From IMG/VR virus record IMGVR_UViG_3300017963_000190, positions 186,001-250,000 of that record: a stretch of DNA of 64,000 bases, one strand, 5' to 3'. A model generated the notes under the pieces. That model saw nothing but the letters and a program-made list of their open reading frames with translations. It was not told the DNA's origin and did not search any database. Made by a program: the position numbers and the translations under genes. Position 1 is the stretch's first letter. Every line of letters begins with the position of its first letter. This document shows positions 305 through 13,433 of this stretch, in pieces.

Positions 305-371
305 CGAGAGTGCGGCAAGCAATAGATTCACAGAACCAGAAAACTGCTGATTCACGAAAGGAGTGACGAGC

Positions 372-1691
372 ATGGCTAAGAGATCGCGTCGGATGCGTGG
401 AAGGCATTCGATTTCAGATGCACCAGGAGGCAGCTATGGGCCTAAGTGGCACGAGATGCTTACGTACATCACGAAGCCAAAAAAGGGGAAGCTGCGAGAG
501 GTTCGTATTGCTGGAGGGTTTTTTGTAATCTTCCAGCACTACGTGAAATTCCGTAACCGAAAGAATGCGATTTCTGGTTACTATGAGCTGTGCCCAAACT
601 GGAATTGGGAGACCGGTGAGTTCAGGCAGGGACCTGATGCCACCTGTCCCATCTGCGCAGATTTCAACGATCGAGACCTTCCCGAGCACTTGAGGATGTT
701 CGGTAGCTTCCGCTACTACTTTGACGCCTTCGACGTCACGATGGCTAAAGGTAACGGTGGCGAGACGATCTTCGGTGTCGCCTTCGTCAACAAGTACGGT
801 AAAAACGATTTGGCGTCCCTCGCGGATATTCTGGGCAATGAGGTGGATGATGAGGAGAATGGCATCTCGGTCCACTGGTTCCTCGATGAGAATGCAAAAG
901 ACGCAAAAGATCGTATGCGCTTCCACCAGGGACAAAAGATCCCGATTCGCTACGATGAGGACCGCGGCCTTTATTTGATGAAGGGTGGCAAGAAAAAGAT
1001 CTTTAAGGGTGAGCCGACCGACTTCGCGGAGATCATCACTCCCAAGTCTGGTGATGAGATCAAAAACGATCTCCAACGCAACGGCTGCTACCGTGAGCTG
1101 GAGAGCTACTTGGAGTCTCAAGGGGACGACGATATCTCTGCAGATGTTCCTGGGTGGGGTGACGACGGTGAGGAGGCAGAGGAAGAGAAGCCGAAGCGCA
1201 AGCCGCGTTCCTCTCAGAAGAAGTCGGGCAAGGGTGGCGGCAACGCTAAAGGAAAAGGCAAAAGCAAGCCTAAGTCCAAGCCCAAGCCGAAAGGAAAGGG
1301 CAAAGGTAAAGAGAAGTCCAAGAAAGCCGAGGAGGTGGAGACGCCTCCAGATGATGACGAGTGGGGATCTTCCGACGAGGGTTCACCTGGCGACTGGGAT
1401 GACGATCTAGGAGATTCTGGTTCCGACGCCGCAGATGAGGACTGGGGCTCGTCCTCTGACAGTGATGAGAGCTCAGGCGAAGGTTGGGATGATGAAGGCT
1501 CGGACGACTCTGGCTCCGAAGAAGCCTCCGATGACTCTGATGATGGTGATGTGGATGGTTGGGGCGAGGCTTCTCACGACGACTCCTACTTCGGAGACGA
1601 TGATGGAGACGATGATTGGGGGAGCTCCTCCGATGAAGCCGGCGACTCGTCTGACGATGATGGGGATGCGGACGACCCTGAGGACTGGTAG
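372..1691 (+). CDS. Putative ssDNA-binding protein (gp32-like) with Lys-rich linker and very long acidic tail
   Basis: AAGGAG RBS; H..CP..CPIC Zn-type motif; acidic C-terminus; lies upstream of recA. Confidence 0.55.
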   Translation: MAKRSRRMRGRHSISDAPGGSYGPKWHEMLTYITKPKKGKLREVRIAGGFFVIFQHYVKFRNRKNAISGYYELCPNWNWETGEFRQGPDATCPICADFNDRDLPEHLRMFGSFRYYFDAFDVTMAKGNGGETIFGVAFVNKYGKNDLASLADILGNEVDDEENGISVHWFLDENAKDAKDRMRFHQGQKIPIRYDEDRGLYLMKGGKKKIFKGEPTDFAEIITPKSGDEIKNDLQRNGCYRELESYLESQGDDDISADVPGWGDDGEEAEEEKPKRKPRSSQKKSGKGGGNAKGKGKSKPKSKPKPKGKGKGKEKSKKAEEVETPPDDDEWGSSDEGSPGDWDDDLGDSGSDAADEDWGSSSDSDESSGEGWDDEGSDDSGSEEASDDSDDGDVDGWGEASHDDSYFGDDDGDDDWGSSSDEAGDSSDDDGDADDPEDW

Positions 1692-2071: not shown

Positions 2072-3373
2072 ATGGCTAAAAAAGAGAAGGATGACGCGAA
2101 AATAATGTCTGCAGTGGACGCGGTTTCTGTCGCGTTCGAGGAGCTGGACGACCTTGACTGCATTAACCTGCAGCAGGGGAAGCGCGTGCGTGATGCCATG
2201 TCCACCGGAAGCCTTTCGCTTGACCTCATTAAGGGTGGTGGAAACAAACCGGGCCTCATGGAAACCATTTTCGGCCCAGAAGGTTCCGGTAAATCAACCC
2301 TCATTAATTCGTACATCGTCAGCGCACAATCATTGAACATACCTGCTATCTTGTACGATCCAGAATCTGGCTCAGATCCGGTGTACATGCGCACGCAAGG
2401 CGTTGACCTGCGTTATCAGATCTCTGTTAAAGAGGGGAAGAAGACTGTCAAAAAACCCGGATTCTTCTACACACAACCAGAATGCGGAGAAGACGTCTAC
2501 CGTCATATCTTACGGACGCTGCGCCGACTTCCCATCGTAGATGATGGACCAGCTCAAATTCTTTTCTTGATTGATAGCTTTGAGGGGATGGCTAGCGAAG
2601 AGGTCGATGAGAAAGGTGAGGGTGGGCGTATTGCGGATGAAGCGCGCATGCATTCTTACTACCTAAAGAGAGTTGTTCCACGGTTGCGCCGTCGGGGAGC
2701 CATCTTGGTAGGCACCAACCAAATGCGTACCGCAATAGGCACGTATGGGAATCCCCAACAGGAATCTGGTGGGCGTGCACTACGTTACTGGCCAGGATAC
2801 AAAGTTCGGGTTTCTGTTAAACGTGTGGAGGCAGACAAGATTAAGGTGCAAACGCTTCCCGTCATTTGGCGTACGACGAAAAACAAGGCGTTCCCTCCAC
2901 ATCGTAGTACGGACATGCGTATCATGATGGGACGCGGTCTCGATCCAGCCTATGACGCGCTGTACTTCTTGAAGCAGCTGGGGTACATCGAGGTACGTGG
3001 AGGAAAGACAAAAATCCTGCTACCCGGACACGGTAAGGTGTTAAGTTGGAAAGACTTCCGGCGTACTGTAGAAAATCCTGAGTTCCGTGCCAAGTGCTTT
3101 GCAATGTTGCGTAGTAATGATACCTATCGGCGCTACTTTGAGCATAGCAAGGAGTCAACCTACTTCTACGATGCCGACTACACATTCGAAGATGAGGCGG
3201 AAGATGAGGCGGAAGATGAGGAGAAACTGGCACAGCAGGTAGAAGACGATGCTGCTGAGTACGACGAGATGCGGCGCAAGCGACGCAAACGGGGAAAGCG
3301 CCCGCACGGGAAGTCGAAAAAACAGGATCACGAGGATCTCGCCTTTGACGAGGAAATGATGTTCGATGAGTAG
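2072..3373 (+). CDS. recA: RecA/UvsX-like recombinase
   Basis: STGSLSLD, Walker A GPEGSGKS, Walker B LIDS, NQMR, ESGGRALRY, KNK motifs. Confidence 0.9.
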   Translation: MAKKEKDDAKIMSAVDAVSVAFEELDDLDCINLQQGKRVRDAMSTGSLSLDLIKGGGNKPGLMETIFGPEGSGKSTLINSYIVSAQSLNIPAILYDPESGSDPVYMRTQGVDLRYQISVKEGKKTVKKPGFFYTQPECGEDVYRHILRTLRRLPIVDDGPAQILFLIDSFEGMASEEVDEKGEGGRIADEARMHSYYLKRVVPRLRRRGAILVGTNQMRTAIGTYGNPQQESGGRALRYWPGYKVRVSVKRVEADKIKVQTLPVIWRTTKNKAFPPHRSTDMRIMMGRGLDPAYDALYFLKQLGYIEVRGGKTKILLPGHGKVLSWKDFRRTVENPEFRAKCFAMLRSNDTYRRYFEHSKESTYFYDADYTFEDEAEDEAEDEEKLAQQVEDDAAEYDEMRRKRRKRGKRPHGKSKKQDHEDLAFDEEMMFDE

Positions 3374-4409
3374 GTTGGATCCACAGTCGACTTCGGACTT
3401 GCTGCGCACCATATTAATGGTCGCGCGTAAGCTAGGCGACGATGACTACGGGTGCTTTTTGTTTTCCGCAGCACCTGCGTTTCAGGAGGATGTGTGTGGG
3501 TTGGTTGTACGTAGGCCAGGAATGGTCAAGTTCCGCGGGTCAACCGTCGAAGCCAAAGAGCTAGTGCACCGTTTCCATTTGTTGGGCTATTACGTACTAC
3601 TCTACAAATACGATGAATTATCCTCTTGGTACTCTTCTCTAGACGCGTTACCCGCGTACCGGGAGCCGTTGCAGGAACAGCCCTTACTTGAAATAGCGGA
3701 ACACCTTCCTCCACACCAAACTTACGTAGAGCTCTTTGGTAGCGGATCGCCGATGTTTGCTGCAAAAGCGCCCGCAAATGTGGAGGTTTATAATGATGTG
3801 TATAGTCATGTAGTCAATCTGTTCCGCATCCTGCGATACCCAGAAACACTGGGCAAGTTCTTTTTGCTGAGTCGTTTGTTCCCTCCGACACAGCCGATGG
3901 AGGAGTCTCAACTGCGGAGCCATGTACGATATGCAGAAGAGAGCGATCTTGTACTACTGGCTTATAGTTGGTTCATGCACACCTACCCAGTACTCTCTGC
4001 TTTTGTGGGGGCGCAGAGTCAGCAGACCGCATTGCTGTTTGATGGGAACACATCCGAAGTAGCTGATGCATTGATCGCGATAGATTCCAATTTCCTACTC
4101 TTTCGCGACCGCCTGATGCGCATGCAGTTCGAGTATAATGACTGGCGTCGTGTGCTTACTACTTACGACACAGATAAGACATTATTTTGGGTTGACGTGC
4201 CCACTTCTGGGCAGCATGCTCTTACTCCAGAAGAATGTGGGTTACTTGTCAACCATCTAACTTCCTGCGGAGGATCGGCAATTGTTTACATCAACGCTGA
4301 AGACCGCCATGAAATACTGGATGAGCTTTTAGCAAGCGAGGCGTCTAAGAGGCGCTCACGGTGGAAACTCATTGAGTTTAGTAGTTGCTGGATTTACAGA
4401 AAAGCCTGA
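3366..4409 (+). CDS. Dam/D12-class adenine methyltransferase-like protein, probably inactive
   Basis: PPHQTYVELFGSGS and EVYND motifs; DPPY replaced by DVPT. Confidence 0.65.
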   Translation: MSRLDPQSTSDLLRTILMVARKLGDDDYGCFLFSAAPAFQEDVCGLVVRRPGMVKFRGSTVEAKELVHRFHLLGYYVLLYKYDELSSWYSSLDALPAYREPLQEQPLLEIAEHLPPHQTYVELFGSGSPMFAAKAPANVEVYNDVYSHVVNLFRILRYPETLGKFFLLSRLFPPTQPMEESQLRSHVRYAEESDLVLLAYSWFMHTYPVLSAFVGAQSQQTALLFDGNTSEVADALIAIDSNFLLFRDRLMRMQFEYNDWRRVLTTYDTDKTLFWVDVPTSGQHALTPEECGLLVNHLTSCGGSAIVYINAEDRHEILDELLASEASKRRSRWKLIEFSSCWIYRKA

Positions 4410-4457
4410 AACCAGTACACATCATCAAACGCGCGTTGGCGCACAGGAGAGATTGAG

Positions 4458-4733
4458 ATGCCTAGGAAAGCAAAAGATTCTGGAACCAAGTCCCCCAAAA
4501 GCAAGCGGCTCGCTCCGGAGAAGATGGCCCGAGCTGCGCAAATGTTTTACAAGGAGGTAGGTCCCAAGGTGGTCACCGCCTCGAAGATCAAACAATTCTA
4601 CGCAAGCATGGGCCTGCGCGTTGATAGTCAGTTGGTGGAAGCACTGGCCAAGGACTTCACCAAGACGATGCTGGGCGCTGCCAAGCGCTGCGTCGGGAAC
4701 AAACGCGGCACCGTGAGGCCTATGGACCTGTAG
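4458..4733 (+). CDS. Bacterial-type histone-fold protein with basic N-terminal tail
   Basis: VVTASKIK...AAKRCVGNKRGTVRPMDL matches the R-x-T-V-x-x-x-D-L histone-fold signature. Confidence 0.7.
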   Translation: MPRKAKDSGTKSPKSKRLAPEKMARAAQMFYKEVGPKVVTASKIKQFYASMGLRVDSQLVEALAKDFTKTMLGAAKRCVGNKRGTVRPMDL

Positions 4734-4748
4734 TTTTGGGGGACCGCG

Positions 4749-5825
4749 TTGCCTCGTTTTCTCCATACAGCGGACTTGCACCTGAATTCGCTGCGGCGGT
4801 TTAGCAAGTTCTACCTCGACCGGGCGCAGATGATGCTGCGGGAGATCCTGCGTATCGGCCACGAGCACTCGGTGGATTTTATCCTCGTGGCCGGCGATGT
4901 TTACGACCGTCGGGACATTACTCACCTGGAGCGCCAGCTGCTGTCGGAGTGGTTGGCTACATCGGATATACCTATCGTGGCCATCAGTGGCAATCACGAT
5001 AAGCGTTCCAACGAGGTGGGAGACACTTGTTTGAGCTACCTTTCCTGGCTCAGTGAGAAATTCCACGAGCATGTTGTGTACGACGGTGCACCACTCATTG
5101 TGGAGATACGCGGCTGCGCGCTTATCCTCGTACCATTTCAGGGATGGATGGATCAGGAGCTATACTTAATACTGGATGCACTGGTTCCTAGGGCAGTGGA
5201 GTCCGATTTGCCGGTGGTGGTTGCGATGCACGAAGCCGTTCAGGGCTGCGTCACTGACGTGGGAATGACGGTTACCAAATCCAACCAAATTCGCTTGGAC
5301 GACGCATTTCCAGACGTAACGTACTGGGCTCTTGGTGACATGCACGTGAATCAGCAAGTAGCAGATCGAGCATGGTATTCAGGGTCGCCGCATCAGACCA
5401 AGTTCGATGAAGTGCAAGAAAAGGGCGTTCTCATCGTAGACACCGATGATCCAAGTAATCCAGAGTTTGTTCCTGTTCCGTCCATCCCGCTTTTGATGTT
5501 GACCGAAGAGCCATTTAAGTGGCCAGACCCCACAGAAGCTTTGGTGCAGTTCCGCCCAGATGGTCCGTCACCCGAGTATGTGCTACCGCCGAACGTAGAA
5601 ATACATCCTAGTGTAATCGTAGGCGGCATCGAAAAAGAGACAAAAGAGCGACAGCTGGTAGGGATTTTCGACGGTCTTGATGACGCTTTACTGCGGGCTT
5701 CCCTTCCAGGTGAGATGCTTCCTTTAGCATGGCGAATCGCTTGTAAACTGGCACGCACGCTGCAAATAGATGTAGAGCTACCAGAAAGATACCAGACTTC
5801 CACGGAGCCCACAGAAGATGATTAA
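4749..5825 (+). CDS. sbcD: SbcD/Mre11-like nuclease
   Basis: HTADLH, AGDVYD, GNHD, ALGDMH, YSGSP motifs. Confidence 0.9.
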   Translation: MPRFLHTADLHLNSLRRFSKFYLDRAQMMLREILRIGHEHSVDFILVAGDVYDRRDITHLERQLLSEWLATSDIPIVAISGNHDKRSNEVGDTCLSYLSWLSEKFHEHVVYDGAPLIVEIRGCALILVPFQGWMDQELYLILDALVPRAVESDLPVVVAMHEAVQGCVTDVGMTVTKSNQIRLDDAFPDVTYWALGDMHVNQQVADRAWYSGSPHQTKFDEVQEKGVLIVDTDDPSNPEFVPVPSIPLLMLTEEPFKWPDPTEALVQFRPDGPSPEYVLPPNVEIHPSVIVGGIEKETKERQLVGIFDGLDDALLRASLPGEMLPLAWRIACKLARTLQIDVELPERYQTSTEPTEDD

Positions 5826-6996
5826 CGTTCAGCACTTAGCTGTGAAATACCGTCCACGCACTCTGCGAGAGGTGATAGGACAAAAGCAGGTGGTTGGGAG
5901 TATTATTGGAGCACTGCGGCGTAAGAGCATCCCGCCGGTGATCCTCCTGCATGGACCCCATAGCACAGGCAAGACCACTATTGCCCGTCTGCTGGCCAAG
6001 TATTTGAACTGCGAGAAGCCCGACAAGGATCACACTCCTTGCGAAAAGTGCTCCAGCTGCAAGGCGTCGAACGATGTACTCGCTGGGCGTTCCGTACACA
6101 CCGATGTTACTGAGCTCAACGCAGCGCTTCATGGGGGAGTAGACGCAATCCGGCGCTTGGAGAGTTTGGCTCCGCAAGCCCCTCGTTACAATGTGCGCAT
6201 TTTTATATTGGACGAGGCGCACGGTATCACAGCTACAGCTTTCAGAGGAGCTCTAAAGCTTTTCGAGGATCCTCCTCGTCGAGCCATGTTCTTCTTGTGC
6301 ACCACAGATTTCGAGAAACTGCCTAAGCAGATTATCGATCGCTGCCACATCTTTAAGCTGACCCCGATCGATACAGATCTTATAGCGAAGCGTGTTTACC
6401 AAGTTGCAATAAAAGAGGGATTCAAGCCAGGAAATCCCAAGATGCTGAAAAAGCTGTGCCAGCAGATTGGTGCAGCGTCCGACGGTCACATGCGCCAAGC
6501 ACTGGGGCTACTAGATAATATCAGGAATTATGCTGAAGGGCAGGAAGGTTCCATCAATTGGGATAAGATGCTGCCGGAGATAATCGAGAACACTCCGGAG
6601 CTTGCCCCATATGTGACGGCTCAGCGCTACGTGGCCGCAATTTTTAGCGGGAAGCATCCTCGCGCTTTTCTGGCCATCGACAACACGCAGAACCATGACT
6701 ATCTGGTGCGCCGTGTATTGGAGTGCTTTGATTTAATCGTCTCCTCTTGGATCGATGAAGAGCACCTGGTTGACCGCGGGAAGTATTGGATGCTCAGAGG
6801 AGTACATGTACCTTCCAAGGACGTTGGCAAGAAGGTGCTGCTCCAGTCTGATGGGATGGAGGAGATCATGACGATTTACCTTGATGCGCTTGATCGTATC
6901 AAGAACTATACTACTGATCCCAAGGTTACTGTGCAAGCGGCAACACTGCGGGTCATGAAAATCATCCGTAGTTGGAATAAACTGAGCAAGAGCTGA
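5818..6996 (+). CDS. dnaX: DNA polymerase III gamma/tau-like clamp loader subunit
   Basis: LAVKYRP, GPHSTGKTT, LNC...PCEKCSSC, ILDEAH motifs. Confidence 0.9.
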   Translation: MINVQHLAVKYRPRTLREVIGQKQVVGSIIGALRRKSIPPVILLHGPHSTGKTTIARLLAKYLNCEKPDKDHTPCEKCSSCKASNDVLAGRSVHTDVTELNAALHGGVDAIRRLESLAPQAPRYNVRIFILDEAHGITATAFRGALKLFEDPPRRAMFFLCTTDFEKLPKQIIDRCHIFKLTPIDTDLIAKRVYQVAIKEGFKPGNPKMLKKLCQQIGAASDGHMRQALGLLDNIRNYAEGQEGSINWDKMLPEIIENTPELAPYVTAQRYVAAIFSGKHPRAFLAIDNTQNHDYLVRRVLECFDLIVSSWIDEEHLVDRGKYWMLRGVHVPSKDVGKKVLLQSDGMEEIMTIYLDALDRIKNYTTDPKVTVQAATLRVMKIIRSWNKLSKS

Positions 6997-7006
6997 TAAC
7001 ATTATC

Positions 7007-9451
7007 ATGGTTCGCTTGGATTACGAATCTCTGGAATTCGAAAATGCCTACATCTACCGGCGCTGTTCTGTGCCGCTGGAGAATCAAGGGCTTGTGCTGA
7101 TCCGTGGCTTGAATATGGACGACGCTGGCTATCTGGGTGCTGGCAAGAGTTCTATATTCGAAGTCTTCTCCCAGATACAGATAGGAAAGGGTGGTAAGCC
7201 TGATCGGCGTAAAGGGGATCATCGATCTGAGATAGTCAACTCGTTTGTAGGTGGTGACCTGGCTGCACGGTTAAAGCTGCGTGTGGATGGCCATCCTTAC
7301 GAGATCCGTCAATATCGAAGCCACTACCGCCATGGCAACAAAGTCTTCATTATTGACAGGCAGACCGGCAAAAATATTCTTCCTAGGAGTGCGACCAGAG
7401 CACCTCATAAGTACGTGCGCGAGGAGCTGCTGCGTTTGGACGAGACTACGTTTTTCAATCTCATTTACTTAGTGCAAGAGCTCAACAATGTGATGATTCA
7501 CGGGTCTGAGTATGACCGCCGTAAGCGGCTCACTGTGATGTTCGACCTACACGTATATGACGAGCTTCGTGCCGCGGCAAACCGTAGTTTGGGTTTGCAG
7601 GAAACCGCCATGGCGGACATCGAGTCAGTTCGATCGGAGCTGTTCGAGGTAGAAGAACGCTTGGATGACGCACCAGATTTAGATGAGCTGGAGCAGGACC
7701 TTGAGGAGACACAGCAACAACTGCAGCAGTATCAGGAGGAGCACAGCAGCGATACCAAGAAATACACTACCTTGTCCGATCGTGTCGCCAAGCTGCAGCG
7801 CCGCGAGGAGTGCCGAACTCAAATAGTGAAACGGTTCCATGCAAAACCTTACGCATTATCAAAGAAATTCCCCAAACCAACGGATATAACTGCTGTTGAT
7901 GTCACTGCCTGGAAAAAGAAGCGGGATAATTTGAACGCCGAGCTCGCCAGCGTGACTAATGATTTATCGAAGCTGCGCAAGCGTTCTGTTTTGGAGGGCC
8001 AGCTCCGTAAATTGAGCGGGCGTGACCTAGAAGAAATCCAGCAGGAGCTGGCGGAGGTTAAAGCGCAGCTGACCTACTTGACGAAAGTGGAGCTCCCTCA
8101 ATCAGAGGAGCGTGCGGAGCTGCTGGGGAAGCTGACCAACCTGCAGGAGCCTGATGCTGATGTTTCCGTCTTGGAGGAAGAGCAGCAGGATACCACGTCA
8201 CGTGAGCGCTCGCTTACGAGCTCAATAGAAAGCCTGAGTCTGCAGTTACAGGGTGCGGTTTGTCCTACTTGCCATCGTCCTTTTGCTATGACGGCAGAGG
8301 AGATAACTGCCAAACAGGTTGAGCTCAAAGACCTTCGATCTGAGCTGGAAGAGGTGACAGCTTACTCGAATGAGCTCAAGAAACGTATTCGAGGGGCACG
8401 CATTTTTTCACAAGTGCGTTTGCGCATGAAGGCGATAGAAACAGAGCGATCTCCTGATGAGGTCATGAGCGATGTTAGGGAGAACACTAAGCTTGAGCGG
8501 CAGCTTACAGCCGAGCATGAGACGTCTCAGCGCCGCCTGCAGATAGAAGCCGAGTTGGCAGCAATGCCAAGCGAAAGTAAGGTAGAGCTGGAGGATAAGT
8601 CCAAGAAGATTGAGCGCCAGCTTACCAAGGCGGCCACGTGGTTCGACGATGCCAAGTACATCCGCGAGCGCCTAGCGGAGATGGAGAAACTTCCGCGAGG
8701 CAAGGTCCGAGAGGCGGAAAAGGATGCTCGTGAGCTACGCATCCGGATGCGTAGAGCCTCCAAATTGATTTCTGAGACAAGCTCAGAGGTAGCGCACTTA
8801 GAGAGCAGTGTTGATGAGATACGCCGTCTGCGTAGGCGTGCGACTACTCTGCGCCGCACAATACTTAAACGGGACTCAGTCATAAAGGAAATTCAGTGCT
8901 TAAAGGCGCTCCACAAAGCGTTTGGTTCTGGTGGATTGAAGCATGACCGGTTTCAGTCGATATTGACCGATGCAGCTGAGCGTACTGTTCCATCTTACGC
9001 CAACATTTTGTGGCCAAGCAGGAACGTCGAGCTCCAGCTGGATGATCAGGATGGCTCTTTGCAGCTCCAGATGGTCAGAACCGACACCAACACCATCACC
9101 AACAGCAGTCTGCTTTCTGGTGGAGAACGCCACAAGTCTGGGTTGGCCTTCCTCTTCGGGATGCGCGATCTGAAGGAGATGTACACAGGAAGCTCCGCGA
9201 ACATCTTGGTAGTGGACGAGCCTTTTGGGAACATGGACCCTTTAGGGACCGAGGGTCTTTTGTCGATCTTCTCTATGCTACGTCAGAAGTTTTGCTCGGT
9301 CTTCGTGATCAGCCATCGGCCTGAGGTGCTGTCCCACCCAATCTGGGACCAAACTTGGTGGGCAGTCCGCGAGAATAACGATGCTCAGCTTTATTTCAAT
9401 GAGCTGCCAGCGCGGTATCAGCAAATCGCGAATGAACTTGTAAAACAATAA
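7007..9451 (+). CDS. sbcC: SbcC/Rad50-like SMC ATPase
   Basis: GAGKSS, coiled coil, CPTC zinc hook, LSGGE, VVDEPF, ISH. Confidence 0.9.
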   Translation: MVRLDYESLEFENAYIYRRCSVPLENQGLVLIRGLNMDDAGYLGAGKSSIFEVFSQIQIGKGGKPDRRKGDHRSEIVNSFVGGDLAARLKLRVDGHPYEIRQYRSHYRHGNKVFIIDRQTGKNILPRSATRAPHKYVREELLRLDETTFFNLIYLVQELNNVMIHGSEYDRRKRLTVMFDLHVYDELRAAANRSLGLQETAMADIESVRSELFEVEERLDDAPDLDELEQDLEETQQQLQQYQEEHSSDTKKYTTLSDRVAKLQRREECRTQIVKRFHAKPYALSKKFPKPTDITAVDVTAWKKKRDNLNAELASVTNDLSKLRKRSVLEGQLRKLSGRDLEEIQQELAEVKAQLTYLTKVELPQSEERAELLGKLTNLQEPDADVSVLEEEQQDTTSRERSLTSSIESLSLQLQGAVCPTCHRPFAMTAEEITAKQVELKDLRSELEEVTAYSNELKKRIRGARIFSQVRLRMKAIETERSPDEVMSDVRENTKLERQLTAEHETSQRRLQIEAELAAMPSESKVELEDKSKKIERQLTKAATWFDDAKYIRERLAEMEKLPRGKVREAEKDARELRIRMRRASKLISETSSEVAHLESSVDEIRRLRRRATTLRRTILKRDSVIKEIQCLKALHKAFGSGGLKHDRFQSILTDAAERTVPSYANILWPSRNVELQLDDQDGSLQLQMVRTDTNTITNSSLLSGGERHKSGLAFLFGMRDLKEMYTGSSANILVVDEPFGNMDPLGTEGLLSIFSMLRQKFCSVFVISHRPEVLSHPIWDQTWWAVRENNDAQLYFNELPARYQQIANELVKQ

Positions 9452-11792: not shown

Positions 11793-13433
11793 ATGCCTCG
11801 TGAAGGAAACCATCTTGAAGATCTAGATACCGGCACGCTCAAATCTGCTATCCTTGTCCTGGAGGATATAGAAGCGGCTGACGGCAAAAACGCGCGAGAA
11901 GAGCTGCTCCGCGTCAATAAGGACAACCAAGCTCTGCAGGAGATCCTATACTGCTCCTTGGGAACAGAGAAGTACCATATTCGTCTTCCGGACAAGATCG
12001 ATTCCGCGGATAAGCTGCTCAATCCGCTTCTGTCCTTCAAAAAGTTCTTGGTCGTGCTGCAGGTCCTGAATGCTCGAAAGATTAAAAGCACGAAGGAGGC
12101 GAAGGCCAAGGTAACGGGGTTTTTGCGCAAATGCCATCCCCGTTTGCGCAAGTGGTTTCAGCGTACCATTAATCACAATCTCCGTATTGGGGTGAGCGGC
12201 ACCACCGTCGAGAAGGTTTACGGGACAGGGTTCTGGACTGGAGCAAAGGAAGGAGAATTCCATTACCATGGCTGCTCCTTAGCCAAGAAGATGGAAGACG
12301 CTTATCCTGGAGACAAAGAGCCGGAATTCCCTGTTGCTGTCGAGTTCAAGCTGGATGGCGAGCGCTCGATGCCGTTTGTTTTCTTTGACGACGGCGACAA
12401 CTACCATGTGGAGATCTACACCCGCGGCAAGCTCCGTAAGGAGCAGGTGGAGTCTGTCGAGCCATTGATGCTGCAGTTTCTGGGTGTTGCCGAGAAGCTG
12501 GCAGAAATTAGCGGCATCGAGGATTCCGGGGGCATGTTCCTCGATGGGGAGTTCTTGGCCACGGATTGGAACGAGACATCCAGCGCCGTAGGGAAGACCG
12601 TCAACTTTGACGAAGCCGCTTTCTTGGAGCAGATCAAAGTCATTTTGTTCGACTGGGCGCCCATCAGTGCGTATATGGCGAAGCAATTTGACATGCCATG
12701 GAAGAAGCGCAAGCAGCTGCTTATGCAGGCTGCCGGCGCCAAGCGTCCTTTCGAAAAAGTTATGCGTATCGAGGACAACGTCTACGTGCTTGGGCATAAG
12801 ATAGTCCATAACATGGACGAGCTGGAGGCGTTCCACGCTAGGTCACTTGACGGTGGTTTCGAGGGAAGCATGATCAAGGTGCTCAACGCGCCTCATGTAT
12901 TCCACCGTAAGCATAAATGTATCCTTAAGCTCAAGCCGGAAGACGAGGAAACCGGTACCATTACCAGATTGGTCTCTGGTGAGGGGATGCACTCTGCCGC
13001 TTCCAACGCAGACCGTCAGCGCGTACTGTCGCTCATGCACGATTGGCAGGGAGATGGAACCTGCGATGGCATCGAGAATGATGGATCCTATTTTCATGCT
13101 ATGGGGATAGAGCATCCGGACGAAGCCGTGAAGGAGCTGCGTTCCATAATCAAGGATTCCGTTGACAGGCGTGTGTCCGTGCACCTGGATGATGACACTG
13201 TTTCGTATCGCTACGGAGAGCGGCTAGGGTTTTTCGAGGTTGACTGGAACGGTGAAACCATTCATGTTGGAGGTGGCCTACGATTCAAAGCCGGGCAGGA
13301 TGATCGGATGCGATTCTGGCAAGCTCGCGAAGATCTCGTCGGCACGAAAATAGATTTCAAGGTCCAGAAAGATCAAACAGACGTAGCGAAAGCAAGGTTC
13401 AACAAGTTCGTCAGGTTGAGAGAAGATCTCTAG
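11793..13433 (+). CDS. ATP-dependent DNA ligase
   Basis: KLDGER, FLDGE, FD, EGSMIK, KLK, RFNKFVRLRED motifs. Confidence 0.9.
   Translation: MPREGNHLEDLDTGTLKSAILVLEDIEAADGKNAREELLRVNKDNQALQEILYCSLGTEKYHIRLPDKIDSADKLLNPLLSFKKFLVVLQVLNARKIKSTKEAKAKVTGFLRKCHPRLRKWFQRTINHNLRIGVSGTTVEKVYGTGFWTGAKEGEFHYHGCSLAKKMEDAYPGDKEPEFPVAVEFKLDGERSMPFVFFDDGDNYHVEIYTRGKLRKEQVESVEPLMLQFLGVAEKLAEISGIEDSGGMFLDGEFLATDWNETSSAVGKTVNFDEAAFLEQIKVILFDWAPISAYMAKQFDMPWKKRKQLLMQAAGAKRPFEKVMRIEDNVYVLGHKIVHNMDELEAFHARSLDGGFEGSMIKVLNAPHVFHRKHKCILKLKPEDEETGTITRLVSGEGMHSAASNADRQRVLSLMHDWQGDGTCDGIENDGSYFHAMGIEHPDEAVKELRSIIKDSVDRRVSVHLDDDTVSYRYGERLGFFEVDWNGETIHVGGGLRFKAGQDDRMRFWQAREDLVGTKIDFKVQKDQTDVAKARFNKFVRLREDL

What the first reader, a model, noticed from the sequence alone, without database searches (positions are those of the whole stretch)
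4458..4733. Phage-encoded bacterial-type histone with a basic tail inside the replication operon
Seen: C-terminal KRGTVRPMDL and a Lys/Ser-rich N-tail (PRKAKDSGTKSPKSKR). Known: Bdellovibrio/Leptospira-type histones carry this signature. Inference: it coats or protects phage DNA; the tail may be modifiable.
Basis: partly seen in the sequence, partly recalled or inferred. Interest (0 to 1): 0.6.

Follow-up and report, generated by a model that had tools for sequence, protein, structure and literature searches.

The report
Jumbo-phage face-to-face histone with basic tail
A 91-residue gene in the recombination/replication operon of a ~260-kb marine tailed phage encodes a bacterial-type, Leptospira HLp-like "face-to-face" histone with a lysine-rich tail. 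The class was described from metagenomes in 2025, so this is a well-supported new member, not a new kind of thing.

Summary
It has no Pfam, PHROG or NCBIfam hit. A profile of its 26 relatives matches the solved alpha3-truncated histones: HLp E 5e-18, HTkC 1e-11, HBb/Bd0055 5e-8. The AlphaFold model (pLDDT 82) superposes on HLp at 0.8-1.0 A.

It keeps the RxTxxxxD clamp (R83, T85, D90) and the R/N/R triad (R77, N81, R83) that builds the HLp tetramer. A four-copy model uses exactly those residues. It is therefore the face-to-face (FtF) type, not the Bd0055 "dimer" type.

The record is a contractile-tailed jumbo phage with tail sheath, baseplate and 33 tRNAs in the window. In 11 lineages, at 33-55% identity, the gene sits between a RecA-like gene and an Mre11-like gene, followed by clamp loader and Rad50-like genes (seen in the eight loci long enough), in a collinear module running to the DNA ligase in the longest loci.

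Phage FtF histone-fold proteins with 5-40-residue lysine-rich tails ("VFFHFP") were already reported by Liu et al. 2025. New here are the fixed synteny, an extra N-terminal helix and the residue mapping onto HLp.

DNA coating or protection and tail modification remain untested. No acetyl-, methyl- or phospho-transferase was found in the record.

The parts
4445..4449 (+). Shine-Dalgarno AGGAG, 8 nt upstream of the ATG
   Evidence: read directly from the sequence
4458..4733 (+). histone gene, 91 aa plus stop (P0001)
   Evidence: relatives; synteny
4458..4514 (+). residues 1-19: disordered Lys/Ser/Pro-rich basic tail (7 K/R, pI 11.2; contains KSPKSKR)
   Evidence: AF2 pLDDT about 60 with no secondary structure; composition; tails of variable length in relatives
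4515..4571 (+). residues 20-38: extra N-terminal helix (alphaN) before the fold. It is conserved in the phage clade (F30, G35, K37 invariant among the close relatives) and absent from HLp and HBb
   Evidence: helix 20-38 in the model; alignments A1 and A2; residues 23-40 lie in the predicted dimer interface
4572..4730 (+). residues 39-91: alpha3-truncated histone fold (alpha1 41-50, L1, alpha2 57-80, L2, alpha3 88-90)
4686..4727 (+). residues 77-90: tetramer triad R77/N81/R83 and the RxTxxxxD clamp (R83, T85, D90)
   Evidence: mapping onto HLp R49/N53/R55/D62; conservation; predicted dimer-dimer contacts at 76-77, 80-81, 83, 89-90
363..1691 (+). 442-aa protein, possibly a gp32-like ssDNA-binding protein (lead only), with a Lys/Gly tract and a long acidic tail; first gene of the conserved module
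   Evidence: Atlas feature score 0.91 to a gp32-bearing cluster; syntenic
2072..3373 (+). RecA/UvsX-like recombinase
   Evidence: Pfam RecA 1.4e-25
3366..4409 (+). D12 methyltransferase-like protein with a degenerate catalytic motif, immediately upstream
   Evidence: Pfam 4.9e-4, PHROG_56 5.8e-13; motif alignment
4749..5825 (+). Mre11/SbcD-like metallophosphoesterase, starting 16 nt downstream of the histone stop (15-nt intergenic gap)
   Evidence: Pfam Metallophos 5.8e-13
5818..6996 (+). clamp-loader ATPase
   Evidence: Pfam DNA_pol3_delta2 1.4e-22
7007..9451 (+). Rad50/SbcC-like ATPase
   Evidence: weak SMC_N, SbcC_Walker_B and AAA_21 hits; 42-59% identical orthologues in the same position
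11793..13433 (+). ATP-dependent DNA ligase, last gene of the collinear module
   Evidence: Pfam DNA_ligase_A_M 7.6e-11

Best explanation
The gene encodes a phage version of the face-to-face (FtF) alpha3-truncated histone typified by Leptospira HLp. Two chains form the usual histone 'handshake' dimer, here enlarged by an extra N-terminal helix (residues 20-38). Two dimers join through the C-terminal end of alpha2, loop L2 and the stub alpha3 (R77, N81, R83, D90) into a tetramer. By analogy with HLp, the tetramer binds DNA without sequence preference through alpha1 (S42, K43, K45), the L1 arginine R54 and L2 (T85, R87), and wraps or bends some tens of base pairs. The disordered Lys/Ser-rich tail adds charge for DNA contacts. 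The gene is co-transcribed with the recombinase, the Mre11/Rad50 nuclease, the clamp loader and the ligase. It is therefore most likely an intracellular architectural protein that compacts or organises replicating and recombining phage DNA, not a virion component. Shown here: gene reality, fold, family, conserved interface and DNA-contact residues, and synteny. Inferred: tetramer formation, DNA binding, timing of expression and biological role.
For: Sequence. A single-sequence search matches HLp 9qt0 at E 6e-4 over residues 37-90. The family profile matches HLp at 5e-18, HTkC at 1.4e-11 and HBb at 5e-8.

Fold. The AF2 model has pLDDT 82, about 90 over the fold. Foldseek ranks HLp first (target-normalised TM 0.89, rmsd 0.8 A, 53 columns, 36% identity), then HBb and HTkC. 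VIA-align gives Z 7.8, 7.3 and 7.2 for HLp, HTkC and HBb, against 5.8 or less for nucleosomal and TAF folds. ESM Atlas neighbours are 55-77-aa bacterial histone-like clusters.

Residues. HLp tetramer residues R49, N53 and R55 and clamp residue D62 map to R77, N81, R83 and D90. These are 96-100% conserved in 27 sequences. DNA-contact positions S42, K43, K45, T85 and R87 are conserved.

Assembly. A four-copy model scores ipSAE 0.74 against a best control of 0.19. The mark was reached by 20 of 30 proteins solved as pairs of one chain and by 1 of 23 solved as single chains; these counts hold only roughly, because my own alignment and four copies (not two) were used. Partner pLDDT is at least 83 and the runs agree in 100% of contacts. 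Contacts to a second dimer fall exactly at 76-77, 80-81, 83 and 89-90.

Context. The same position, between a RecA-like and an Mre11-like gene, is seen in 11 lineages at 33-55% identity. There is a single histone gene in the record, so the assembly is a homo-oligomer. The phage nature is supported by tail sheath at 5e-102, a baseplate wedge, 33 tRNAs and an IMG/VR virus record.
Against: There is no experimental datum on this protein or on any phage FtF histone. The complex score may reflect memory of the solved HLp tetramer. Three HLp contact positions differ (K21->A49, S52->G80, T61->M89). No RNA or protein evidence of expression could be obtained, because only DNA contigs hold the sequence. 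Synteny with recombination genes would also fit a protein-protein role. The host is unknown, so a host-directed role cannot be excluded.
Confidence: 0.8

Rival explanations
1. It is an accessory subunit of the recombination machinery. The histone fold would serve mainly as a protein-protein module, as in TAFs, NF-Y or MHF. It would load or restrain RecA-like or Mre11/Rad50-like proteins on DNA ends and would not act as a general chromatin protein.
For: The position between the recombinase and Mre11-like genes is invariant in 11 lineages. It persists even where the methyltransferase-like gene is lost and even though tail length varies freely. A clade-specific alphaN helix could be a docking element.
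Against: The residues that contact DNA in HLp are conserved, and so is the homotetramer interface. No interaction with any neighbour was tested.
Confidence: 0.25
2. It is a host-takeover or anti-defence factor. The histone would coat phage DNA to shield it from restriction or CRISPR nucleases, or it would condense and silence the host nucleoid.
For: HLp reorganises the E. coli nucleoid when expressed there, and it binds DNA non-specifically (PMC12701072). The protein is very basic, with pI 10.45. Cellular relatives occur in bacteria, for example P0029/P0039 next to QueC and an ABC permease, so mimicry of or competition with a host histone is conceivable.
Against: The gene is not in an early or host-takeover-looking block. 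It sits inside the replication/recombination operon. Nothing distinguishes phage from host DNA for a non-specific binder. The host is unknown.
Confidence: 0.2
3. It is a virion-packaged DNA-condensing protein, comparable to adenovirus protein VII, the histones of giant viruses or T4 internal proteins.
For: The basic tail and the histone fold fit such a role. Giant-virus histones are packaged; this rests on general knowledge and was not tested here.
Against: Structural genes (tail sheath, baseplate) lie on the opposite-strand block at 0-180 kb. This gene lies in the + strand replication block. Headful-packaged tailed-phage DNA is normally protein-poor (general knowledge).
Confidence: 0.07
4. 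It is not a functional gene, only a chance ORF or a decaying host-derived fragment.
For: There is no Pfam, PHROG or NCBIfam hit. The word-index search found nothing.
Against: There are 36 relatives with fold-critical residues invariant. The gene has a good RBS and conserved synteny. The model is confident.
Confidence: 0.01

Closest known systems
[quoted passage not shown]
   Same: These are phage-encoded, have an FtF-like alpha3 histone fold, are predicted to form homotetramers, and carry an N-terminal lysine-rich tail of 5-40 residues. They were mined from IMG/VR, the collection this record belongs to.
   Different: That paper gives no genomic context, no residue-level comparison with a solved FtF tetramer, and no mention of an extra N-terminal helix. 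Its supplementary tables are not held here, so I could not check whether this very protein is in its list.
HLp of Leptospira perolatii (PDB 9QT0-2; Hu et al. 2025, PMC12701072), a bacterial FtF histone
   Same: It is the best sequence and structure match. The RD clamp, the R49/N53/R55 tetramer triad and most DNA-contact residues are kept. The protein ends right after the D-hydrophobic pair.
   Different: HLp is cellular, 63 aa, and has neither tail nor alphaN helix. Only 34-36% identity over 53-57 residues. K21, S52 and T61 are replaced. An L1 arginine (R54), where HLp has M26, is 93% conserved (25 of 27) in this family.
HBb/Bd0055 of Bdellovibrio bacteriovorus (PDB 8CMP, 8FVX, 9EZZ), a 'bacterial dimer' histone
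   Same: It has the same alpha3-truncated fold and the RKTxxxxD motif.
   Different: [quoted passage not shown] The phage protein has that pair. Structure-based identity is only 19-23%.
'Phage histones' of Schwab et al. 2024 (A0A2E7QIQ9), equal to VTTHFP of Liu et al.
   Same: They are phage-encoded alpha3 histone folds.
   Different: They have a C-terminal tetramerisation helix and lack the RxTxxxD motif. Here the protein ends at alpha3, has the motif, and its extension is N-terminal.
Eukaryotic and Asgard histones with N-terminal tails (H3, H4)
   Same: Both have a disordered basic N-terminal tail. The alphaN + alpha1 + alpha2 + alpha3 order loosely resembles H3 (72 residues aligned, rmsd 4.8 A, Z 4.9-5.0).
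   Different: Alpha3 is truncated, alpha2 is shorter and the tetramer geometry differs. No modifying enzymes were found in the record.

Membership tests
alpha3-truncated histones (Schwab et al. 2024) | Histone fold: alpha1-L1-alpha2-L2-alpha3 | tested here: met
   The AF2 model has helices at 41-50, 57-80 and 88-90. Target-normalised TM is 0.89 and rmsd 0.8 A to HLp. All top matches are histone folds.
alpha3-truncated histones (Schwab et al. 2024) | Alpha3 of only 3-4 residues, with the protein ending there, and a shortened alpha2 | tested here: met
   Alpha3 spans 88-90 and the chain ends at L91. Alpha2 is 24 residues. 26 of 27 aligned relatives end at the same column, and one has a single extra residue.
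alpha3-truncated histones (Schwab et al. 2024) | RxTxxxxD motif (RD clamp) | tested here: met
   The motif is R83-G-T85-V-R-P-M-D90. T and D are invariant and R is present in 26 of 27 sequences.
alpha3-truncated histones (Schwab et al. 2024) | Significant sequence similarity to characterised members | tested here: met
   Profile against PDB: HLp 5.1e-18, HTkC 1.4e-11, HBb 4.8e-8.
Face-to-face (FtF) subfamily | Conserved R49, N53 and R55 (HLp numbering) at the dimer-dimer interface | tested here: met
   These map to R77, N81 and R83, each present in 26 of 27 sequences.
Face-to-face (FtF) subfamily | Stable homotetramer through the alpha2 C-terminus, L2 and alpha3 | tested here: inconclusive
   The four-copy model scores ipSAE 0.74 against a best control of 0.19, a mark reached by 20 of 30 proteins solved as pairs of one chain and 1 of 23 solved as single chains (counts only rough: own alignment, four copies). 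Partner pLDDT is at least 83 and contact agreement is 100%. Inter-dimer contacts fall at 76-77, 80-81, 83 and 89-90. This is in silico only, may draw on the solved HLp tetramer, and needs SEC-MALS.
Face-to-face (FtF) subfamily | Non-specific DNA binding and wrapping | not testable with these tools
   Only conservation of contact positions S42, K43, K45, T85 and R87 could be shown.
VFFHFP (Liu et al. 2025) | Encoded by a Caudoviricetes genome | tested here: met
   It is an IMG/VR virus record of 260 kb with tail sheath, baseplate and 33 tRNAs.
VFFHFP (Liu et al. 2025) | N-terminal tail of 5-40 residues enriched in lysine | tested here: met
   The tail is 19 residues with 5 K and 2 R (36 residues lie before the fold). 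Relatives have tails of 6-52 residues.
Bacterial dimer histones (HBb/Bd0055 type) | Absence of the FtF R/N dimer-dimer residues; dimer only | tested here: not met
   R77 and N81 are present and conserved, and a tetramer is predicted. It is therefore not filed under this type.
'Phage histones' (Schwab 2024) / VTTHFP | C-terminal tetramerisation helix after the fold; no RxTxxxD | tested here: not met
   The chain ends at alpha3 and the motif is present.
DUF1931 pseudodimeric histones | Two fused histone folds lacking DNA-binding residues; Pfam PF09123 | tested here: not met
   There is a single fold and no PF09123 hit. The PDB label 'DUF1931 domain-containing protein' on 9QT0 is only the depositor's name for HLp.

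The most novel reading that the evidence does not exclude
The histone could be an obligatory, clade-defining component of a jumbo-phage recombination-dependent replication system. A tailed, alphaN-bearing FtF tetramer would 'chromatinise' replicating phage DNA and gate access of the RecA-like and Mre11/Rad50-like proteins. That would be a minimal phage chromatin with an H3-like helix order that arose independently of eukaryotes.
Probability: 0.2. Interest if true: 0.75.

Novelty: new member of a known kind. Interest (0 to 1): 0.45.

Why it matters
Bacterial histones have been characterised only since 2023-2025, and no phage histone has been studied at the bench. This clade offers a clean test case. 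It has one small gene, a solved close homologue (HLp) with mapped tetramer and DNA-contact residues, and natural variation in tail length from 6 to 52 residues. It also has a fixed genomic partnership with recombinase, Mre11/Rad50, clamp loader and ligase genes. Showing what the protein does to DNA, and to those enzymes, would say whether phages use histone-based DNA organisation during replication. It would also show what a basic tail adds to a prokaryote-type histone.

Tried and rejected
- **Family libraries.** Pfam, PHROGs and NCBIfam gave no family for the protein.
- **Close-relative searches.** The word-index protein search found only the protein itself. tblastn against 50,697 deposited phage genomes found nothing at E<=1, so no isolated phage in that set has a close copy. 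A single-protein scan of IMG/VR found none. An alignment-based scan then found four contigs.
- **Big HMMER search.** I used it once, because the above left the protein open.
- **Searches that could not run.** The nearest cellular lineage and the host therefore remain unknown.
- **Paralogues.** No second histone-fold gene was found in the record, by phmmer or by profile.
- **Expression.** No RNA run holds the sequence. The two DNA runs (sediment and seawater metagenomes) carry identical contigs and may be one data set, so they add nothing independent (5,001 letters laid, within the operators' limit).
- **Transcription signals.** Promoter and terminator scans were not above shuffled expectation.
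- **Tail writers.** Acetyltransf_1, SET and Pkinase were all absent. An SNF2-like match was below cut-off. The record is estimated to be only 74% complete.
- **Spurious hits.** P0021 and P0030 in the big search are repeat proteins and were discarded.
- **Prior-art check.** The supplement of Liu et al. is not held.

Full report
**1. The observation**

The window holds an ATG-initiated ORF at 4458-4733 on the + strand.
- An AGGAG ribosome-binding site lies 8 nt upstream.
- The upstream gene ends 48 nt before the ATG. The next gene starts 16 nt after the stop codon (15-nt intergenic gap). Promoter and terminator scans show nothing above shuffled expectation. The layout is therefore that of an operon.
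- The first 19 residues carry 7 K/R against 1 D/E (pI 11.2). That is the 7th most positive N-terminus among 361 ORFs of the genome, with binomial P = 0.003.

**2. The replicon**

The window is bases 186,001-250,000 of a 260,067-bp IMG/VR virus record, linear and estimated 74% complete.
- The window carries 33 tRNA genes.
- The record carries a tail sheath (PHROG E 5e-102), a baseplate wedge, topoisomerase II and DnaB-like and other helicases.
- It has a strand-separated layout: a minus-strand block at 0-180 kb that includes the structural genes, and a plus-strand block after that.

It is a contractile-tailed jumbo phage. Near-identical DNA occurs in sediment and seawater metagenome runs. The host is unknown.

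**3. What the protein is**

- **Curated libraries.** Pfam, PHROGs and NCBIfam do not recognise it. The word-index search and tblastn against deposited phage genomes find nothing.
- **First lead.** A direct phmmer search of PDB sequences gives one meaningful hit, chain 9qt0_A (E 6e-4, residues 37-90). This is the histone HLp of Leptospira perolatii.
- **Exhaustive search.** Because the cheap searches left the protein open, I ran the one exhaustive HMMER search. It returned 36 relatives at E<=1e-3, the best at 49% identity and E 1e-16. Two of these hits, P0021 and P0030, are unrelated repeat proteins and were discarded.
- **Alignment.** In an alignment of 27 of them, T85 and D90 are invariant, and R54, R77, N81 and R83 are at least 90% conserved. 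26 of the 27 chains stop at the same column right after the D-hydrophobic pair, and one has a single extra residue.
- **Profile.** A profile of that alignment hits HLp at 5e-18, the archaeal FtF histone HTkC at 1.4e-11 and HBb/Bd0055 at 5e-8.
- **Model.** The AlphaFold2 model has mean pLDDT 82, about 90 over the fold. It shows a disordered tail (1-19), an extra helix (20-38), alpha1 (41-50), alpha2 (57-80) and a three-residue alpha3 (88-90).
- **Structure comparison.** Foldseek ranks HLp first (target-normalised TM 0.89, rmsd 0.8 A, 36% identity), then HBb and HTkC, then eukaryotic H4. VIA-align gives Z 7.8, 7.3 and 7.2 for HLp, HTkC and HBb, against 5.8 or less for nucleosomal histones and TAFs. 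ESM Atlas neighbours agree.

**4. Which kind of bacterial histone**

Schwab et al. (PMC11390915) split alpha3-truncated histones into five types: face-to-face (FtF), bacterial dimer (HBb), ZZ, Rab-GTPase and "phage" types. The dimer type lacks an R/N pair that makes the dimer-dimer contact.

The HLp paper (PMC12701072) names these residues:
- R49, S52 and N53 against R55, T61 and F63 as the tetramer interface.
- R55-D62 as the RD clamp.
- S14, K15, K17, K21, T27, G29, T56, T57 and R59 as DNA contacts.

With the offset (query = HLp + 28), they map as follows:

| HLp role | Query residues |
|---|---|
| Tetramer interface | R77, G80, N81, R83, M89, L91 |
| RD clamp | R83-D90 |
| DNA contacts | S42, K43, K45, A49, V55, S57, G84, T85, R87 |

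The triad and the clamp are kept here and in 26-27 of 27 relatives. S42, K43, K45, T85 and R87 are also conserved.

A four-copy model of residues 20-91 scored ipSAE 0.74 against a best control of 0.19.
- The mark was reached by 20 of 30 proteins solved as pairs of one chain and by 1 of 23 solved as single chains. These counts hold only roughly, because my own alignment and four copies were used.
- Partner pLDDT is at least 83, and the runs agree in 100% of contacts.
- The scored chain touches one partner along the whole handshake interface, including residues 23-40 of the extra helix. It touches a second partner exactly at 76-77, 80-81, 83 and 89-90.

That is the FtF interface. Since HLp is solved, the pass shows likeness and does not prove assembly. 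The protein is thus HLp-like, not Bd0055-like. It is also not the "phage histone" of Schwab et al., which has a C-terminal helix and lacks the motif.

**5. Context and conservation**

The gene sits in a run of co-oriented genes:
1. A 442-aa protein (Atlas lead to gp32 SSB).
2. A 117-aa protein.
3. A RecA-like protein.
4. A D12 methyltransferase-like protein.
5. The histone.
6. An Mre11/SbcD-like protein.
7. A clamp loader.
8. A Rad50/SbcC-like protein.
9. Three unknown proteins.
10. An ATP-dependent DNA ligase.

The contigs of relatives show the same order. The histone lies between the RecA-like gene (usually with the methyltransferase-like gene between them) and the Mre11-like gene in P0002, P0003, P0005, P0007, P0009, P0011, P0015, P0019, P0023 and the IMG/VR contigs L023-L025.

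tblastn shows the module collinear in L019, L021 and L023-L025: all 12 genes match in L021 and L023-L025, and 11 of 12 in L019, where p170 has no match at E<=1e-4.
- Histone identity is 43-55%.
- The clamp loader is 35-50% identical in those loci (57% in the short locus L013).
- The methyltransferase-like protein is only 27-35% identical there (41% in L016).

In L029 the methyltransferase-like gene is absent, yet the histone remains, overlapping the end of the recombinase gene. There is only one histone-fold gene in the record.

**6. The tail and the extra helix**

Tails before the alphaN helix range from 6 to 52 residues and are often extremely lysine-rich (P0004, P0011, P0015, P0036).

The helix at 20-38 is conserved in the phage clade, with F30, G35 and K37 invariant among the close relatives. 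It has no counterpart in HLp or HBb.

I found no acetyltransferase, SET or protein-kinase domain in the record. "The tail may be modifiable" therefore has no support beyond composition.

**7. Prior knowledge**

Liu et al. [quoted passage not shown] These are predicted tetramers with an N-terminal lysine-rich tail of 5-40 residues. The core of the finding is therefore published as a bioinformatic class.
- That paper does not mention Mre11. It gives neither genomic neighbourhood nor experiments for this class.
- Its supplement is not held, so I cannot say whether this very protein is listed.
- A full-text search found no experimental work on phage FtF histones.
- That paper says basic tails are absent from cellular FtF proteins. 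However, P0029/P0039 has one and lies beside QueC and an ABC permease on apparently cellular contigs.

**8. Mechanism and rivals**

The best-supported reading is a non-specific DNA-wrapping or DNA-bending homotetramer, made together with the recombination-dependent replication genes, that organises replicating phage DNA.
- I put 0.8 on the molecular identity and mode, meaning an FtF histone that binds DNA as an oligomer.
- I put much less on any particular biological role.

Rivals:

| Rival | Confidence |
|---|---|
| Recombination accessory factor | 0.25 |
| Host-takeover or anti-nuclease coat | 0.2 |
| Virion DNA condenser (gene is not in the structural block) | 0.07 |
| Non-gene | 0.01 |

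**9. Verdict**

Novelty: a new member of a known kind. The useful additions are the fixed synteny, the alphaN helix and the residue-level mapping onto HLp. Interest is moderate.

Noticed in passing
window 3366-4409 (+); orthologues in L014, L016, L019, L021, L023: The D12 N6-adenine methyltransferase-like gene upstream of the histone keeps a SAM-binding FGSGS-type motif. Its catalytic motif IV reads DVPT here, DFPT, DVPP and DPVE in orthologues, and canonical DPPF only in L023. The gene is missing altogether in L029. It is probably a mostly inactivated methyltransferase fold with another role.
   Followed up: partly
window 363-1691 (+): This 442-aa protein is the first gene of the conserved module. 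Its N-terminal 265 residues have a CxxC...CxxC pattern and an Atlas lead (0.91) to a gp32 ssDNA-binding cluster. They are followed by a Lys/Gly/Pro-rich tract and then about 130 residues of Asp/Ser/Gly/Trp acidic repeats. It could be an SSB with an oversized acidic tail, or a chaperone-like partner for the basic histone.
   Followed up: partly
window 22821-63352: There are 33 tRNA genes, 31 of them on the + strand, spread among small ORFs and covering most amino acids. This is an unusually large phage tRNA set.
   Followed up: no
protein P0038 (305 aa; 112-kb JGI/Logan contig), a relative of the L021 locus: An HNH-endonuclease ORF is fused in frame to the long-tailed histone P0015. It may be a homing endonuclease inserted just upstream and read through, or it may be a gene-call artefact.
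   Followed up: no
proteins P0014, P0024, P0025, P0027, P0032, P0037 (hits): These relatives are tandem doublets of the same alpha3 fold. Several have an N-terminal signal-peptide-like hydrophobic segment, and P0027 appears to carry an RRM-like domain. Apparently exported histone-fold doublets are odd and were not explained.
   Followed up: no
L027 1760-1999 and L028 967-1206 (P0039): A 79-aa FtF-like histone with a Lys/Arg-rich N-terminal tail lies beside QueC and an ABC-transporter permease, which is a cellular-looking context. Basic tails on FtF histones are therefore not confined to phages, contrary to a statement in Liu et al. 2025.
   Followed up: partly
G000:C1 1-180000 versus 180001-260067: The genome is split into a minus-strand block (structural genes, helicases, topoisomerase II) and a plus-strand block (recombination and replication module, tRNAs). 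Cumulative GC skew rises steadily across the window.
   Followed up: no
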